Positions 37,586 through 62,903 of a DNA stretch of 64,000 nt are shown piece after piece. Every line of letters begins with the position of its first letter. The stretch's first letter is position 1. A model generated the notes under the pieces. That model was not told where the DNA came from, did no database searches, and saw nothing but the letters and a program-made list of their open reading frames with translations. The stretch lies in IMG/VR virus record IMGVR_UViG_3300044797_000098, positions 310,001-374,000 of that record; one strand, written 5' to 3'. A program made the translations under genes and the position numbers.

Positions 37586-38575
37586 TCAATTCTCTTTACA
37601 CACATTCACATAAAAAACATTACCATCAATTTCAATCTTTTTTGCATCCTTAGGATCATCATTATATGACATCAGTGCAATTTCATTCGCGAGCAGTTCT
37701 TTTTTCAACTTATCTTTATACTTTACGATGACATTAGCGGGTTTTGGCATACAAAAGATTTCGATATATACTCGATCTGTCAATTCCAATTCGAGTTCTT
37801 TACGCACATTTTGCAATGCAGACTTAAAATCAGCAATAAATCCTCTTTCCAATAACTCATCGTTCAAGTTAGTATCAAGAATGATTACCCCTGATTTATT
37901 CGATGAGGAAGCATAACCCGCTTTTGATACGAACTCAACTTCAATATCTGCTAATGTTAGATCAATATCGCACATTCTAACTGCTTCTTTGTTTTCGAGC
38001 AGTTTATACAAGTCTTTACGATCAGCAAAACTCATCTTTGCCAGTTCAATTTTCAACGCATTACCTTGCTTGCCTCGTCCAGTTTTGCCAAGATTTCTAA
38101 AATTAGGCTTCAATACCATATCGGTGAATTGATTTGTGTCTTCGACGAATACAACTTTATCAACATTTAATTCATCGCCAAGCACATTAGCGTAATCGTT
38201 GTTCTTGCAATCAACATACACCATATAATTTTGCACTTGTTTATCTGCGAATAACACATATGCTGTGCTCAATGGTTGTCGATTACGGATTTTAACTTCC
38301 GCACGAACCTTATGTCCCATCTCGCACATATCACGAATTGACCGCATACGATAGATTAGTTCGTAATCGATATCACCAACTGGTGATTTATTTACACTAA
38401 CGATAGCGAAGTTCGGATCGTTTTGATATTCCGCCTGATATTCTTTGATCAACTGATCTGATTTATCATCAATGGAATTGAACGAGGCGAATGCAGTCCA
38501 TTGCTGAACAACACCTTCATCATTTGTGGAATTATAGCGAATTGTGTATTCACGCACGGTTTTTGTTTCCCTCAA
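37586..38575 (-). CDS. Stand-alone C-terminal part of a type-2 isoleucyl-tRNA synthetase (DUF5915-like); no catalytic core
   Basis: ID.EL..RM..IR.....G..VR....IRNRQPL and LDT.L..EL...G...DF..ALQ..RKE..LE.TDR; no HIGH/KMSKS. Confidence 0.75.
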   Translation of the reverse strand: MRETKTVREYTIRYNSTNDEGVVQQWTAFASFNSIDDKSDQLIKEYQAEYQNDPNFAIVSVNKSPVGDIDYELIYRMRSIRDMCEMGHKVRAEVKIRNRQPLSTAYVLFADKQVQNYMVYVDCKNNDYANVLGDELNVDKVVFVEDTNQFTDMVLKPNFRNLGKTGRGKQGNALKIELAKMSFADRKDLYKLLENKEAVRMCDIDLTLADIEVEFVSKAGYASSSNKSGVIILDTNLNDELLERGFIADFKSALQNVRKELELELTDRVYIEIFCMPKPANVIVKYKDKLKKELLANEIALMSYNDDPKDAKKIEIDGNVFYVNVCKEN

Positions 38576-38798
38576 TCAGTCCTGTTGCATTCCAGTCTTT
38601 ACCATTGATCCACTGCATAAGATTTGCAATACCAGTTAGATTTTCTACAACACCGGCTTTACGGAAGTTTTTACTTGGTTCTCTTGCTACATAATAGATA
38701 TGACCGCCCCAAAATTGATCGCCCATATAATTGATAGACATTTCTCTACCATTATTTTCTTCTTCCCAAGATATTCCGCCATCCATATCTATAATCAT
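38550..38798 (-). CDS. Hypothetical protein
   Basis: Tiling ORF. Confidence 0.55.
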   Translation of the reverse strand: MIIDMDGGISWEEENNGREMSINYMGDQFWGGHIYYVAREPSKNFRKAGVVENLTGIANLMQWINGKDWNATGLIEGNKNRA

Positions 38799-39277
38799 TA
38801 CAAAATCGCCTTGCTAAATTGTTTATAGTCTTTATATTGTTTAGTAATCCTATTCCAAAATCCCCACGAATTATTTTTTCTACTACCAGTGAAAAACAAT
38901 GTCCAAGGCCCATTATTTTCATCAATAAGTTCAACGCGATGAAAATCATTGTGTGTGAAAAAATTGAATGACAATGGCTTTACAAAACGACGAGTGATTG
39001 TATCATCGGGATTGCGTCGTTCTTCCCAATAACCTTGCGTCAATACGAAACTGAATGCCCACTTTGCAGGATGATGATGCAACAAGTATGTTTTTCCACC
39101 AACACCATCATTAGGATCAGTATCTAAATCGCTACTTCGGAAGTGGTGTAAAAATAGGTTTCCCAACTCTCTATCTTTCAATAATAGGTAATATCTTGTT
39201 AGATACGGATTGCCATCTGGTTTTGGAATTGTGATATTTGGGATATGTTCAATCAACGAACGAAGAATAGTAAGCAT
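38798..39277 (-). CDS. Cupin-fold phage protein
   Basis: LHHF..SD...HHHP..W..SFVL..GYWE...HRVEL...WTLFFTG; GGAG RBS. Confidence 0.65.
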   Translation of the reverse strand: MLTILRSLIEHIPNITIPKPDGNPYLTRYYLLLKDRELGNLFLHHFRSSDLDTDPNDGVGGKTYLLHHHPAKWAFSFVLTQGYWEERRNPDDTITRRFVKPLSFNFFTHNDFHRVELIDENNGPWTLFFTGSRKNNSWGFWNRITKQYKDYKQFSKAIL

Positions 39278-39297
39278 TGTTCTCTCCTAAAAATTGC

Positions 39298-39501
39298 GGG
39301 AATGACCACACTTTTGTGGTTTGGCATTTAACTTTGTCCAGTTTTCACTCTTATGAATAACGCTTTGCTATTCACCGCTTCGGGCACATTCAGCAGCGAG
39401 TGAAAGGGATTTAGTTTATTGCTTGCGGGCACGCCTCTGATGATTGGTTAGATTATCTTTCAACTTTGGACATTTACTTTAAATCTAAAAAATCCATTCC
39501 C
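39298..39501 (-). ncRNA. Candidate ~204-nt structured ncRNA (tmRNA-like topology, non-canonical)
   Basis: No ORF; predicted start site coincides with 5' GGGAATG, which pairs with 3' CATTCCC; several internal stems. Confidence 0.55.
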
Positions 39502-39508
39502 TGTTAAT

Positions 39509-39537
39509 ATTGTAAGCACTAACCCGACACCCGTCAA
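39509..39537 (-). promoter_or_regulatory. Sigma70-type promoter for the candidate ncRNA
   Basis: TTGACG-17 bp-TACAAT. Confidence 0.8.
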
Positions 39538-40037
39538 GGGGCTTTTGACTTTTTGTCCTTATTAGAAACAACTCTTGGCATTTCAACACCGAAGATAGTT
39601 CGATATATATTTGCCAAGCAAGTTTCCGAGCATGCAACTCTATTCGGTAAGTCCTGCGTTTCATATGCCTTGTTCATATTGCCAATGGGTTTTTGGCAAC
39701 TACAACATTTGGCCATACTTTTGAATGTTGATTGTGCCCATCGTTCAAGTTTTTCGAGGTCTTTTTTATTATGTGGACCGAAGTATGTTTTCGTTCCTTT
39801 ACCGTCGTGATTGACAAGTGATATGAGTTTTCGTTCATCCCAATATGAATTATTCCACTCATCTAAAATACGAATAGCAACATTTACTGCATCGATAGGA
39901 CTTAATAGATTTTTTTGTTCCCCCAAAAACTTTGCAGGAAGTATGTCTTTACCAGCATATTTTTTACCACCACAAGATATTTCAACAACTAATTGATTAT
40001 CTTCGTAATATCGTTGGCGACTCGTAAAAAAAGACAA
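39534..40037 (-). CDS. Hypothetical protein with C-terminal Zn finger
   Basis: GGAGGT RBS before TTG at 40037; CCSC...CSETC. Confidence 0.6.
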   Translation of the reverse strand: MSFFTSRQRYYEDNQLVVEISCGGKKYAGKDILPAKFLGEQKNLLSPIDAVNVAIRILDEWNNSYWDERKLISLVNHDGKGTKTYFGPHNKKDLEKLERWAQSTFKSMAKCCSCQKPIGNMNKAYETQDLPNRVACSETCLANIYRTIFGVEMPRVVSNKDKKSKAP

Positions 40038-40106
40038 AATACACCTCCAAAAAATTATCTTTGTCGATATATACATATAACCACATATGAATATATGGAG
40101 ACAAAA

Positions 40107-40949
40107 ATGACAAGAAAACAAAGATCGGATACGATTATTTTAGACAAAAACCAATTACAAAATGACTATAATGAATTAAAAAGTGTAAGGAAGGTTGGTA
40201 AAAAATACGGTATTTCTCGTGAAACGGTAAGAAAATATATACATTTATATAATCTTAATTATATTAAACCAATTAAATATAATTGTAATGAAAATTTTTT
40301 CAATGAAGAAACTGAATCTGCATATTATTTTGCTGGATTTTTAGCAGCCGATGGCTGCCTATTTAAGAAAAAAGGAGAAAGTTATGAAGTCAAACTCACA
40401 CTGAAAGACACCGACAAAGATATTTTATTTAAATTTAAACAATCAATTAATTCTGATGCACCAGTAATTGAGACGAAAAGATTGTGTAGAGTTTTTACTA
40501 GATATTTCAATATAACAACAGCGCAATTTAGAATTGCATCTAAAATTGTGTTCAATAATCTAAAACAAAAGTTTCAATTAACTCCTCGTAAATCATTAAC
40601 TCTTAAATTTCCGATAAAACTAAAAAACAACGAGTTAATTAGACATTTCATTCGTGGTTATTTCGATGGTGATGGGTCGATTTATATCAATCATACAGAT
40701 AAAAAAAGTGGTATAAAACATATGCGAATTAGTATTGTAGGAACAAAACATATGTTGGAAAACATTAGATATGTATTAATGCGTGAATGCATAATAAAAA
40801 AGGGAACAATTATAAAAATTAATAATATTTATGAACTTCGATATGGCGGTAATAATATTGTGTATGCTATATATAAATATTTATATAAAGATGCTACATT
40901 ATTTCTTGAACGAAAAAAACTTAAATTTGAATATATCTCACCAAGATAG
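40107..40949 (+). CDS. LAGLIDADG homing endonuclease with N-terminal HTH
   Basis: AYYFAGFLAADGC and HFIRGYFDGDGSI; GGAG RBS before ATG 40107. Confidence 0.9.
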   Translation: MTRKQRSDTIILDKNQLQNDYNELKSVRKVGKKYGISRETVRKYIHLYNLNYIKPIKYNCNENFFNEETESAYYFAGFLAADGCLFKKKGESYEVKLTLKDTDKDILFKFKQSINSDAPVIETKRLCRVFTRYFNITTAQFRIASKIVFNNLKQKFQLTPRKSLTLKFPIKLKNNELIRHFIRGYFDGDGSIYINHTDKKSGIKHMRISIVGTKHMLENIRYVLMRECIIKKGTIIKINNIYELRYGGNNIVYAIYKYLYKDATLFLERKKLKFEYISPR

Positions 40950-43820: not shown

Positions 43821-44243
43821 CTACCGTCCTACAACCAGCGCGCCAGCAATAATCAATACCATCCCAATAACTTTCATCATCGTTATTTGCTCTCTGAAAA
43901 ATATCGAAGTCAAAATCAATGTTATTACGATTGGCATTGTTGTTGATATAGCATACAATGTAGCAACATTATTGCTATATTTTACGCCATATATGAATGC
44001 AAGTCCTGCCATCGTTGCTGATAGCGTTGCAAGCATTGCCCACATCACGCCAGTTATATTGAATGGTTGTGCTGAAACTTTCGTATTCAATATATGTAAA
44101 TATATTGGCAACAAGCATATTCCAACACAACAATTTACAATGTGGATTTGGAATGGATGTATGTGTTTTACTGCAAGTTTTAAAAAGAAACTCCAACATC
44201 CATATCCTATAATAGATAGGATTATTAGATATTTGCTATTCAT
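43821..44243 (-). CDS. EamA/DMT-family small membrane transporter
   Basis: Five TM segments; ends E.IT..K.IG.VLIIAG. Confidence 0.8.
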   Translation of the reverse strand: MNSKYLIILSIIGYGCWSFFLKLAVKHIHPFQIHIVNCCVGICLLPIYLHILNTKVSAQPFNITGVMWAMLATLSATMAGLAFIYGVKYSNNVATLYAISTTMPIVITLILTSIFFREQITMMKVIGMVLIIAGALVVGR

Positions 44244-62830: not shown

Positions 62831-62903
62831 TCGGCGTGGTAGGGGTCGAACCTACTAATCGAAGAATATAAGTCTTCTGTCTTAACCGTTTGACGACACG
62901 CCG
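62831..62903 (-). tRNA. tRNA-Ile (anticodon UAU)
   Basis: Acceptor CGGCGTG/CACGCCG+A; D stem GTC/GAC; anticodon stem GAAGA/TCTTC with loop CT-TAT-AT; T arm GTAGG-TTCGACC-CCTAC; CCA not encoded. Confidence 0.9.

What the first reader, a model, noticed from the sequence alone, without database searches (positions are those of the whole stretch)
39298..39537. Promoter-driven ~204-nt RNA with tRNA-like ends and tmRNA-like topology
Seen, minus strand: TTGACG-17-TACAAT puts +1 at 39502/39501, exactly where GGGAATG begins; it pairs with CATTCCC at the 3' end. A 5-bp hairpin (ACCAC-AAAAGT-GTGGT) directly precedes the 3' strand, like a T arm. A stemless ~10-nt loop follows the 5' strand, then a long interrupted helix (ATTTAA/TTAAAT, TGTCC/GGACA). 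Inside are TTTCACTC/GAGTGAAA, TGAATAGC/GTTATTCA, two copies of GTGCCCG(C)AAGC, and a frame reading TKSLSLAAE..., like an ssrA LAA tag but not followed by a stop. Established: this acceptor/D-loop/helix-2/T-arm order is that of tmRNA. Against a canonical call: no G3-U70, no TTCGA loop, no CCA, short length. Inference: a divergent tmRNA or tRNA mimic (for example an SmpB, AlaRS or nuclease decoy) or a new ncRNA class.
Basis: partly seen in the sequence, partly recalled or inferred. Interest (0 to 1): 0.76.

Follow-up and report, generated by a model that had tools for sequence, protein, structure and literature searches.

The report
New structured leader RNA in jumbo phages
A roughly 205-base RNA at the start of an early operon of a 406-kb peat-soil phage folds into a conserved, covariation-supported shape that matches no known RNA family; it is not a tmRNA, and its function is still open.

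Summary
The element is real. On the minus strand, a sigma-70-type promoter (39537-39509) is followed from +1 by a 205-nt RNA (39502-39298).

- **Fold.** It forms a four-way junction (P1, P2, P3, P7). P3 carries a further three-way junction (P4, P5, P6).
- **Homologues.** Seven more occur, all in the same gene neighbourhood on related phage contigs. In the six strongest plus the window, 94.6% of pair cells are standard pairs, against 33-43% when the partners are slid. 34 of 56 pairs show compensatory changes.
- **No known family.** Rfam 15 has no match even at permissive thresholds. ARAGORN finds no tmRNA or tRNA. The "LAA tag" frame is not conserved, G3-U70 and a T-loop are absent, and the phage has no SmpB. 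The tmRNA reading is rejected.
The promoter survives. So do the 7-bp terminal stem stacked on a 4-6-bp hairpin (a tRNA-minihelix-like geometry) and two internal helices.
- **Expression.** A peat metatranscriptome covers only this element and the first ~150 nt of the next gene, so the RNA is at least partly a leader.
- **Best guess.** It is a cis-acting regulatory leader of a translationally coupled operon encoding a cupin enzyme and an IleRS C-terminal-domain protein.
- **Main rival.** It is a released tRNA-like stable RNA.

This is a new RNA family of moderate to high interest.

The parts
39509..39537 (-). Early promoter: -35 TTGACG (39537-39532), 17-nt G+C-rich spacer, -10 TACAAT (39514-39509). 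The stop codon TGA of the upstream gene lies inside the -35.
   Evidence: The promoter is conserved in 7 of 8 homologous loci. It belongs to a class of 41 minus-strand CTTGAC-N17-19-TAnnnT sites, against 6 on the plus strand, most of them between 287 and 406 kb of the genome.
39298..39502 (-). The structured RNA itself (about 205 nt), from the predicted +1 (A39502/G39501) to the last base of the closing helix P1.
   Evidence: Fold z = -3.45. Covariance model R1 finds 7 homologues. Conserved G-U pairs fix the strand as minus.
39495..39501 (-). P1 5' strand GGGAATG. It pairs with 39298-39304 (CATTCCC).
   Evidence: 7 bp, 100% paired in 7 sequences. Two positions covary (A-U/G-C/G-U and C-G/U-A).
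39442..39494 (-). P2: a long hairpin of variable length. It has a basal helix GATT/AATC and an internal AGUA/GAA-type loop. The apical loop carries the conserved UCCAAA(G) at 39464-39472.
   Evidence: helices 2-4 covary. The UCCA motif is present in 6 of 8 members.
39431..39441 (-). J2/3 (ATCAGA) plus the P3 5' strand GGCGT (39435-39431). P3 pairs with ATGCC at 39327-39323.
   Evidence: AGAGGCG and AAAUGCC are nearly invariant in all 8 members. P3 never varies, so covariation neither supports nor refutes it (helix 5).
39343..39409 (-). The P4-P5-P6 three-way junction.
- P4: TCC + TTTCACTC (39409-39398) with GAGTGAAA (39350-39343) + GGA (39339-39337).
- P5: 39397-39393 with 39378-39374; loop GAAUGUGCCC.
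- P6: 39373-39367 with 39361-39355; invariant loop AAAGC.
   Evidence: Helices 7-10: 17 of 24 pairs have compensatory changes and 90-100% of cells are paired.
39305..39320 (-).
   Evidence: All 4 modelled pairs covary (helix 11). In six members the loop reads R-A-N-N-G-U; in L025 and L087 it differs. None matches the T-loop UUCRANY.
39289..39297 (-). 3' tail GCAA followed by a T-run. The consensus is G-N-C-A-A-UUU. It is conserved even where the next ORF is farther away or different.
   Evidence: GCAA, GACAA twice, GACAU, GCCAG, GCCAA, UCCAAC and AUUUU, each followed by a U-run.
39275..39288 (-). Shine-Dalgarno AGGAGAG (39288-39282) and the ATG (39277-39275) of the downstream gene, 20 nt after P1.
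   Evidence: The spacing from P1 to the start codon is about 20-24 nt in 6 of 8 members.
38798..39277 (-). First gene of the operon: a 159-aa cupin metalloenzyme (phrog_4786, 'cysteine dioxygenase').
   Evidence: AF2 model pLDDT 93.5. The best PDB matches are thiol dioxygenases, quercetinase and HppE. His44, His67, His69 and His113 are invariant.
37586..38798 (-). Translationally coupled downstream genes. An 82-aa ORF (38550-38798) starts in a TAATG overlap. It is followed by a stand-alone protein (37586-38575 as an ORF; about 323 aa) homologous to the C-terminal ~220 residues of type-2 IleRS.
   Evidence: PF19302, 6.8e-31; MupA/MupB residues about 781-1005.
39534..40037 (-). Upstream gene: a ~167-aa protein with four invariant Cys and an invariant C-terminal SNKDKK. 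Its last codons form the -35 region.
   Evidence: No Pfam family and no PDB fold match.

Best explanation
This is a previously undescribed family of structured RNA. It is about 205 nt long and is transcribed by the host RNA polymerase from a phage early promoter, so that its closing helix P1 starts at +1/+2.

**Fold (shown).** P1, P2, P3 and P7 form a four-way junction. P3 leads into a P4/P5/P6 three-way junction. The junctions and loops are almost invariant (AGAGGCG, GAAUGUGCC, GCAAAGCG, AAAUGCC).

**Transcript (shown, weakly).** It is co-transcribed with the operon it heads.

**Function (inferred).** It is a cis-acting regulatory leader.
- The folded RNA sits about 20 nt from the start codon of a translationally coupled operon: cupin enzyme, then an 82-aa protein, then an IleRS C-terminal-domain protein.
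- Its state is set by an unknown small molecule or protein, and that state tunes ribosome access and/or mRNA survival.
- One concrete route: the pyrimidine-rich 3' strand of P1 (UUCCC) pairs either with the 5' GGGAA (RNA folded, ribosome site free, 5' end protected) or with the GGAG of the ribosome-binding site.
For: **The structure is real**
- Folding z = -3.45.
- 14 compensatory pairs between two sequences in a structure-blind alignment.
- 94.6% of cells paired against 33-43% in slid controls; 34 of 56 pairs compensatory.
- Indels of 1 and 4 nt, and conserved G-U pairs, argue against coding and fix the strand.

**The family is new**
- No Rfam match in the window or in 7 homologous loci.
- No ARAGORN call.

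**The promoter is real**
- It is one of a strand-biased class of 41 early promoters.
- It is conserved in the homologues.

**The RNA is a leader**
- It is always in sense orientation at or near the head of the same operon.
- In L087 a gene has been inserted between promoter and RNA, yet the RNA stays directly upstream of the cupin gene.
- P1-to-ATG spacing is about 20-24 nt in 6 of 8 members.
- No strong terminator separates the RNA from the ORF.
- An RNA-library contig (39128-39347) bridges the RNA and the ORF, while 3.6 kb of flanks have no coverage.

**Alternative pairing**
- With the 5' strand blocked, the P1 3' strand pairs with the ribosome site in the MFE of L002, L021 and L019.

**Coupling**
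- TAATG and 8-nt overlaps link the operon genes.
Against: - No ligand or binding protein is identified.
- The anti-ribosome-site pairing is only 4 bp. It does not appear in the window's own constrained fold, and the ribosome site is mostly open in the native fold.
- In L083 the start codon is about 73 nt away. In L025 a different gene (MORN repeats) follows the RNA.
- The conserved CAA-UUU tail right after P1 looks like a 3'-end signal belonging to the RNA itself. That, together with the exact +1 placement of P1, fits a released stable RNA equally well.
- RNA-seq evidence is two low-depth contigs from one run that was itself picked because it holds these words. Strand and DNA carry-over are not controlled.
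- All 8 members come from one syntenic clade, so gene association is not independent evidence.
Confidence: 0.42

Rival explanations
1. It is a stand-alone stable non-coding RNA with a tRNA-like minihelix end. Transcription starts at P1. The 3' end is made just after P1 by leaky termination or by RNase E-type cleavage in the conserved CAA|UUU tail, possibly followed by trimming and CCA addition. The ~205-nt RNA then acts in trans. For example, it could bind or decoy a tRNA-handling protein, such as the IleRS C-terminal-domain protein encoded two genes downstream or a host tRNA-targeting factor.
For: - P1 begins at +1/+2 of a conserved promoter in 7 of 8 loci.
- P1 (6-7 bp) and P7 (4-6 bp) stack with no linker into an 11-12-bp helix, the length of a tRNA acceptor/T minihelix.
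- The tail is N-CCA in L022, L019 and L087, and G(N)CAA elsewhere. It is followed by a U-run even in L083 and L025, where the downstream context differs.
- The phage encodes a PolyA_pol/CCA-adding-type enzyme although it has only 2 tRNAs.
- In the metatranscriptome, word depth over the RNA is about twice that of the contig crossing into the ORF, and the flanks are empty.
- A stand-alone tRNA-anticodon-binding-domain homologue lies in the same operon.
Against: - There is no T-loop, no D-arm equivalent and no tRNA identity elements. ARAGORN and the Rfam tRNA/tmRNA/YrlA models are silent.
- No canonical terminator hairpin abuts the U-run.
- An RNA contig reads through into the ORF.
- In L087 the element has no promoter of its own and lies between two ORFs.
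- The IleRS-domain protein family also occurs on other large contigs. Whether those carry the RNA could not be checked.
Confidence: 0.3
2. It is a passive 5' stabiliser and folding module. A compact structure whose first helix sequesters the 5' terminal nucleotides protects the early operon mRNA from 5'-end-dependent host RNases. It has no ligand and no switching.
For: - P1 pairs nucleotides +2 to +8 of the transcript.
- The ribosome site stays mostly accessible in the native fold.
- The element is co-transcribed with the operon.
Against: - A simple hairpin would suffice for protection.
- Near-invariant junction and loop nucleotides and seven covarying helices over 205 nt indicate selection for a specific three-dimensional shape.
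- In L087 the element is not at the 5' end of the transcript.
Confidence: 0.12
3. It is a divergent tmRNA (ssrA-like), with a tRNA-like domain and an internal tag reading frame.
For: - The order terminal stem / long helix / hairpin before the 3' strand resembles the tmRNA tRNA-like domain.
- A frame reading ...LSLAAE... exists in the window.
Against: - ARAGORN gives no tmRNA in the window, the genome or any family member, even at an 80% threshold.
- No Rfam tmRNA hit at E up to 10.
- G3 pairs with C, not U, in all members.
- The P7 loop is not a T-loop.
- The 'tag' lies in helices P4 and P5, is followed by six more codons before a stop, and is not conserved.
- The RNA has no tmRNA-type pseudoknots and is only about 205 nt long.
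- The phage has no SmpB.
Confidence: 0.01

Closest known systems
tmRNA tRNA-like domain / tRNA acceptor-T minihelix (also T4 stable RNAs C and D, bacterial YrlA; the last two from my own knowledge, not tested beyond Rfam)
   Same: - A 6-7-bp terminal helix formed by the 5' and 3' ends.
- A 4-6-bp hairpin stacked on its 3' strand without a linker, giving about 12 bp in all.
- A single-stranded tail that reads N-CCA in 3 of 8 members.
- It is encoded by a phage that carries a CCA-adding-type enzyme.
   Different: - No T-loop, no D-loop partner, no G3-U70 and no conserved CCA.
- No tag ORF and no tmRNA-type pseudoknots.
- The junction linkers differ from tRNA: 0 nt between P1 and P2, 6 nt between P2 and P3.
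- It is not recognised by ARAGORN or by any Rfam model.
Large riboswitch aptamers closed by a P1 helix with multi-helix junctions (SAM-I, cobalamin, lysine classes)
   Same: - 5'-leader position in front of an enzyme gene.
- A closing P1 whose 3' strand lies close to the ribosome-binding site.
- A four-way junction plus a peripheral junction.
- Invariant junction and loop nucleotides with freely covarying stems.
- A possible loop-to-junction pseudoknot.
   Different: - No sequence or structure match to any Rfam riboswitch.
- No clear expression platform (terminator/antiterminator or strong anti-SD).
- No ligand is suggested by the gene context.
- The family is restricted to one phage clade.
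tRNA-mimicking translational operators bound by the protein they regulate (E. coli thrS operator and ThrRS; phage T4 RegA/gp32/gp43 operators) - from established knowledge
   Same: - A structured leader lies directly upstream of the ribosome site of an operon.
- That operon encodes a homologue of an aminoacyl-tRNA synthetase tRNA-binding domain.
- The operon genes are translationally coupled, so control at the first start codon would spread.
   Different: - No anticodon-arm mimic of tRNA-Ile is recognisable in the RNA.
- The synthetase-like gene is third in the operon.
- Binding has not been tested.

Membership tests
tmRNA (ssrA) | Recognised by dedicated detectors or models (ARAGORN; Rfam tmRNA families) | tested here: not met
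   ARAGORN gives nothing on the window and the whole genome. It gives nothing on the 8 members at thresholds down to 80%. Rfam has no hit at E up to 10.
tmRNA (ssrA) | G3-U70 wobble in the acceptor stem (alanine identity) | tested here: not met
   The third pair of P1 is G-C in all 7 aligned sequences (columns 5/340).
tmRNA (ssrA) | T arm with the conserved T-loop, and a 3' ACCA end | tested here: not met
   The P7 loops are AAAAGU, UAAAGGUU, GAUGGU, GAAUGU, CUGAUCC and CAGUA. The tail is N-CCA in only 3 of 8 members.
tmRNA (ssrA) | Conserved internal tag ORF ending in a stop codon, flanked by pseudoknots | tested here: not met
   The LSLAAE frame lies in helices P4 and P5, runs six more codons before UAG, and is not conserved in L019, L025 or L087. 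No tmRNA-type pseudoknots are present.
tmRNA (ssrA) | SmpB partner encoded by the phage | tested here: not met
   There is no PF01668 match in the 406-kb phage genome. A host SmpB cannot be excluded.
tRNA / tRNA-like structure | Cloverleaf with D and T loops able to form the elbow; recognised by tRNA models | tested here: not met
   The Rfam tRNA model and ARAGORN find only the genuine tRNA-Ile at 62831-62903. The element has a four-way junction, but with different linkers and no T- or D-loop motifs.
tRNA / tRNA-like structure | Acceptor/T-type 12-bp coaxial minihelix with a single-stranded 3' tail | tested here: met
   P1 (6-7 bp) plus P7 (4-6 bp) with a 0-nt linker in all 8 members, followed by G(N)CA(A) or N-CCA. 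This is geometry only. Processing and CCA addition are untested.
Riboswitch (any class) | Match to a described aptamer class | tested here: not met
   There is no Rfam hit on the element in 8 loci.
Riboswitch (any class) | Direct ligand binding that changes the fold and downstream expression | not testable with these tools
   This needs in-line probing or SHAPE with candidate ligands, and reporter assays.
6S RNA / Y RNA-YrlA | Match to the family model (long interrupted helix with a central bubble; Ro-binding stem plus tRNA-like module) | tested here: not met
   There is no Rfam hit. The covariation-supported fold is a branched junction, not a rod.

The most novel reading that the evidence does not exclude
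The RNA is the founding member of a new class of phage regulatory RNA. There are two versions of this reading.
- It is a new riboswitch class sensing a metabolite linked to the cupin enzyme.
- It is a tRNA-minihelix-like operator bound by the operon's own IleRS C-terminal-domain protein. This would be a phage analogue of ThrRS/thrS autoregulation, built from a detached synthetase domain.
Probability: 0.3. Interest if true: 0.8.

Novelty: categorically new. Interest (0 to 1): 0.62.

Why it matters
- Jumbo phages are known to carry tRNAs, tmRNAs and synthetase fragments, but few of their own structured regulatory RNAs have been described.
- A 205-nt RNA with seven covarying helices and invariant junctions is as complex as a large riboswitch or a small ribozyme, yet has no relatives in Rfam.
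- It sits at +1 of an early promoter, in front of a metalloenzyme gene and a free-standing tRNA-binding domain of IleRS. This makes two hypotheses directly testable: a new ligand-sensing leader, or a tRNA-like RNA partner for a detached synthetase domain.
- Either result would add a new element to how giant phages control or exploit the host translation apparatus.

Tried and rejected
**Known families.** These searches gave no hit on the element:
- Rfam at gathering and at permissive E-value thresholds, on the window and on 7 homologous loci.
- ARAGORN at default and relaxed thresholds. Only noise appears at 70%.

**More homologues**
- Exact and gapped DNA patterns in viral contigs found only the L002/L012 contig.
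- The metagenome pattern scan gave 54 stretches. 5 are real, and 4 of those are identical to L002. The rest are chance matches inside conserved protein genes, such as a biotin-carboxylase-like gene.
- The genome-contig scan gave 28 stretches and none is real.
- A protein-guided scan of viral contigs with the upstream protein found only L002's contig.

**Other attempts**
- The P2-loop UCCA to J4/3 UGGA pseudoknot is present in 6 of 8 members, with one G-C to A-U swap. Per sequence it is not above shuffles, so it is kept only as tentative.
- The upstream 167-aa zinc protein has a pLDDT 71 model and no PDB fold match. The atlas leads are below the reliable range.
- Literature searches for DUF5915 and for structured RNAs in huge phages found nothing relevant.
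- No tRNA-Ile anticodon-arm mimic was found in the RNA by eye.

Full report
**Setting.** The window is bases 310001-374000 of a 406,470-bp IMG/VR virus record. The record is estimated 95% complete and has 35.6% G+C. Its only tRNA genes are tRNA-Lys(UUU) and tRNA-Ile(UAU), and ARAGORN calls no tmRNA. All genes around the finding run on the minus strand.

**The observation.** The features below are on the minus strand.
- TTGACG (39537-39532), a 17-nt spacer, and TACAAT (39514-39509).
- GGGAATG (39501-39495) pairing with CATTCCC (39304-39298).
- A hairpin, ACCAC-AAAAGT-GTGGT (39320-39305), that abuts the 3' strand.
- The helices TTTCACTC/GAGTGAAA and GAATAGC/GTTATTC.

The stop codon of the upstream gene lies inside the -35 hexamer. 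The next gene starts 20 nt after the terminal stem and is preceded by AGGAGAG.

The 207-nt stretch folds at -55.1 kcal/mol. Shuffles average -39.9, giving z = -3.45, and none of 200 shuffles folds as well.

**The promoter.**
- Across the whole genome there are 47 sites of the form CTTGAC-N17-19-TAnnnT. 41 are on the minus strand, most between 287 and 406 kb, and many have G+C-rich spacers in an A+T-rich genome.
- The promoter of this element belongs to that class, so it is very probably a genuine early promoter used by the host polymerase.
- The 205 nt downstream of it rank second of 41 in folding z-score.

**Homologues.**
- The downstream 159-aa protein led to a related contig (L002/L012, 82% protein identity). 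That contig has an alignable intergenic region.
- A covariance model built from the two sequences (R1) then found the element in contigs fetched through homologues of the flanking proteins. These are L021, L022, L019 and L083, plus two weaker matches, L025 and L087.
- All eight loci share one gene order: 5'-3' exonuclease, a ~167-aa zinc protein, the RNA, the cupin gene, and (where the contig reaches that far) a DUF5915 protein.
- More distant phages keep the cupin gene in another neighbourhood and lack the RNA.
- The element has one copy per genome. None was found in 28 candidate stretches from cellular genomes.

**Structure.**
- The two closest sequences, aligned by MAFFT without reference to structure, already show 14 base pairs changed on both sides and kept.
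- On seven sequences aligned to the model, 94.6% of pair cells are standard pairs. The figure is 33-43% when the 3' partners are slid by 1-3 columns.
- 34 of 56 pairs have compensatory changes, and no shuffle out of 500 reaches any of the observed measures.
- That alignment was fitted to the model, which favours the structure. The slid controls and the MAFFT result argue that the signal is real.
- Conserved G-U pairs (for example in P3, P5 and P6) would be A-C mismatches on the other strand, so the RNA is on the minus strand.
- Indels of 1 and 4 nt between close relatives, with substitutions concentrated as compensatory pairs, exclude a coding region.

**The fold.** It is a four-way junction with a branched third arm.
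- P1 is the 7-bp closing helix.
- P2 is a long hairpin of variable length with an AGUA/GAA-type internal loop. Its apical loop carries UCCAAA.
- P3 (GGCGU/AUGCC) is invariant.
- P7 is a 4-6-bp hairpin stacked on P1.
- P3 leads to P4, which branches into P5 (loop GAAUGUGCC) and P6 (invariant loop AAAGC).
- The unpaired stretches AGAGGCG, AUA(A/U)GA and AAAUGCC are almost invariant.
- The apical UCCA could pair with a conserved UGGA between P4 and P3. It shows one G-C to A-U swap, but it competes with the base of P4 and is not above chance per sequence.

**Not a tmRNA.**
- ARAGORN finds nothing in any member down to an 80% threshold.
- Rfam 15 gives no hit on the element at E up to 10 in the window, or up to 5 in seven other loci.
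- The third acceptor pair is G-C throughout.
- The P7 loop reads R-A-N-N-G-U in six members and is never a T-loop.
- The LSLAAE frame lies in helices P4 and P5, is not followed directly by a stop, and is not conserved.
- The phage has no SmpB.
- What survives is geometry. P1 plus P7 form an 11-12-bp stack with no linker. The tail after P1 is N-CCA in three members and G(N)CAA in most others, always followed by a U-run.
- The phage does carry a PolyA_pol/CCA-adding-type gene.

**Expression.**
- One peat metatranscriptome holds this sequence.
- Over 4 kb it has only two contigs, 39128-39347 and 39321-39464, both 100% identical. They cover most of the RNA and the first ~150 nt of the cupin gene. 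The flanks are empty.
- This fits a transcript starting at the promoter and reading into the operon, with somewhat higher word depth over the RNA (5.2 against 2.5).
- The evidence is weak. It comes from one low-depth run, chosen because it holds these words, with no strand information.

**Gene context.**
- The first gene encodes a cupin with four invariant histidines. Its confident model resembles thiol dioxygenases, quercetinase and HppE.
- Its stop overlaps the start of an 82-aa ORF (TAATG). That ORF overlaps the start of a ~323-aa protein homologous to the last ~220 residues of type-2 IleRS.
- Control at the first start codon would therefore reach the whole operon.
- In L087 a small lipoprotein-like gene lies between promoter and RNA, and the RNA stays next to the cupin gene.
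- In L025 a MORN-repeat gene lies between the RNA and the cupin gene.
- In L083 an extra ~50 nt with a hairpin precedes the ribosome site.

**Mechanism.**
- I favour a cis-acting leader (0.42) because of four points:
  - the constant sense orientation at or near the operon head;
  - the tight spacing to the start codon in six of eight loci;
  - the read-through contig;
  - the L087 arrangement.
- A possible switch is P1's UUCCC strand pairing with GGAG of the ribosome site when the 5' GGGAA is unavailable. This appears in constrained folds of three members, but it is only 4 bp and is absent in the window's own fold.
- A released tRNA-like stable RNA (0.30) explains the +1 placement of P1, the conserved tail and the minihelix geometry better.
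- A passive 5' stabiliser (0.12) is possible, but it does not explain the invariant junctions.
- The two leading models are not exclusive. A leader can be cleaved off and persist.

**Novelty.**
- No described family matches, and the function is unknown, so I file it as a new RNA family.
- It is rare: eight distinct sequences from peat, soil and forest metagenomes, all in one phage clade. That limits both the statistics and the immediate reach of the finding.

Noticed in passing
window 39993-40949 (+): A LAGLIDADG homing-endonuclease gene with an HTH domain lies on the opposite strand, between the 5'-3' exonuclease gene and the 167-aa gene. Its start overlaps the start of the 167-aa gene. Relatives L021, L022 and L087 have the two genes adjacent without it, so it looks like a recent mobile insertion.
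   Followed up: partly
whole genome G000, mostly 287-406 kb (window 1-64000 included), minus strand: There is a class of about 41 strand-biased promoters, (C/G)CTTGAC(A/G)-N17-19-TA(C/T)ATT, with G+C-rich spacers in a 35.6% G+C genome. This is probably the phage's early promoter set. The 205 nt after the one at genome position 301200 (outside the window) fold even better (z = -3.4) than this element and were not examined.
   Followed up: partly
window 37586-38575 (-): A stand-alone protein is homologous to the C-terminal ~220 residues of type-2 isoleucyl-tRNA synthetase (DUF5915; matches MupA/MupB residues about 781-1005). It has no catalytic domain. About 30 related proteins of 250-420 aa exist, several on contigs of 195-470 kb. 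This appears to be a jumbo-phage family of detached synthetase domains.
   Followed up: partly
window 62831-62903 (-): tRNA-Ile with anticodon UAU. With tRNA-Lys(UUU) it is one of only two tRNAs in a 406-kb phage genome. The genome also carries a PolyA_pol/CCA-adding-type gene (G000 214930-215340).
   Followed up: no
L025 2171-2473 and L087 2060-2284: Two relatives carry different small genes inserted next to the RNA. L025 has a MORN-repeat protein between the RNA and the cupin gene. L087 has a 74-aa lipoprotein-like ORF between the promoter and the RNA. The spot seems to tolerate moron insertion on either side of the RNA.
   Followed up: partly
window 39534-40037 (-): The upstream ~167-aa protein has four invariant cysteines (CxxC...CxxxC) and an invariant C-terminal SNKDKK tail. 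It has no Pfam family and no PDB fold match. Its last three codons (GCC CCT TGA) double as the extended -35 region of the RNA's promoter in most relatives.
   Followed up: partly
window 43821-44243 (-): This is an EamA-type transporter gene. In more distant giant phages, EamA and an isochorismatase-family gene lie directly upstream of the cupin gene and an M50 peptidase gene lies downstream. The block from the exonuclease gene to the RNA therefore looks like an insertion into an older gene cluster.
   Followed up: no
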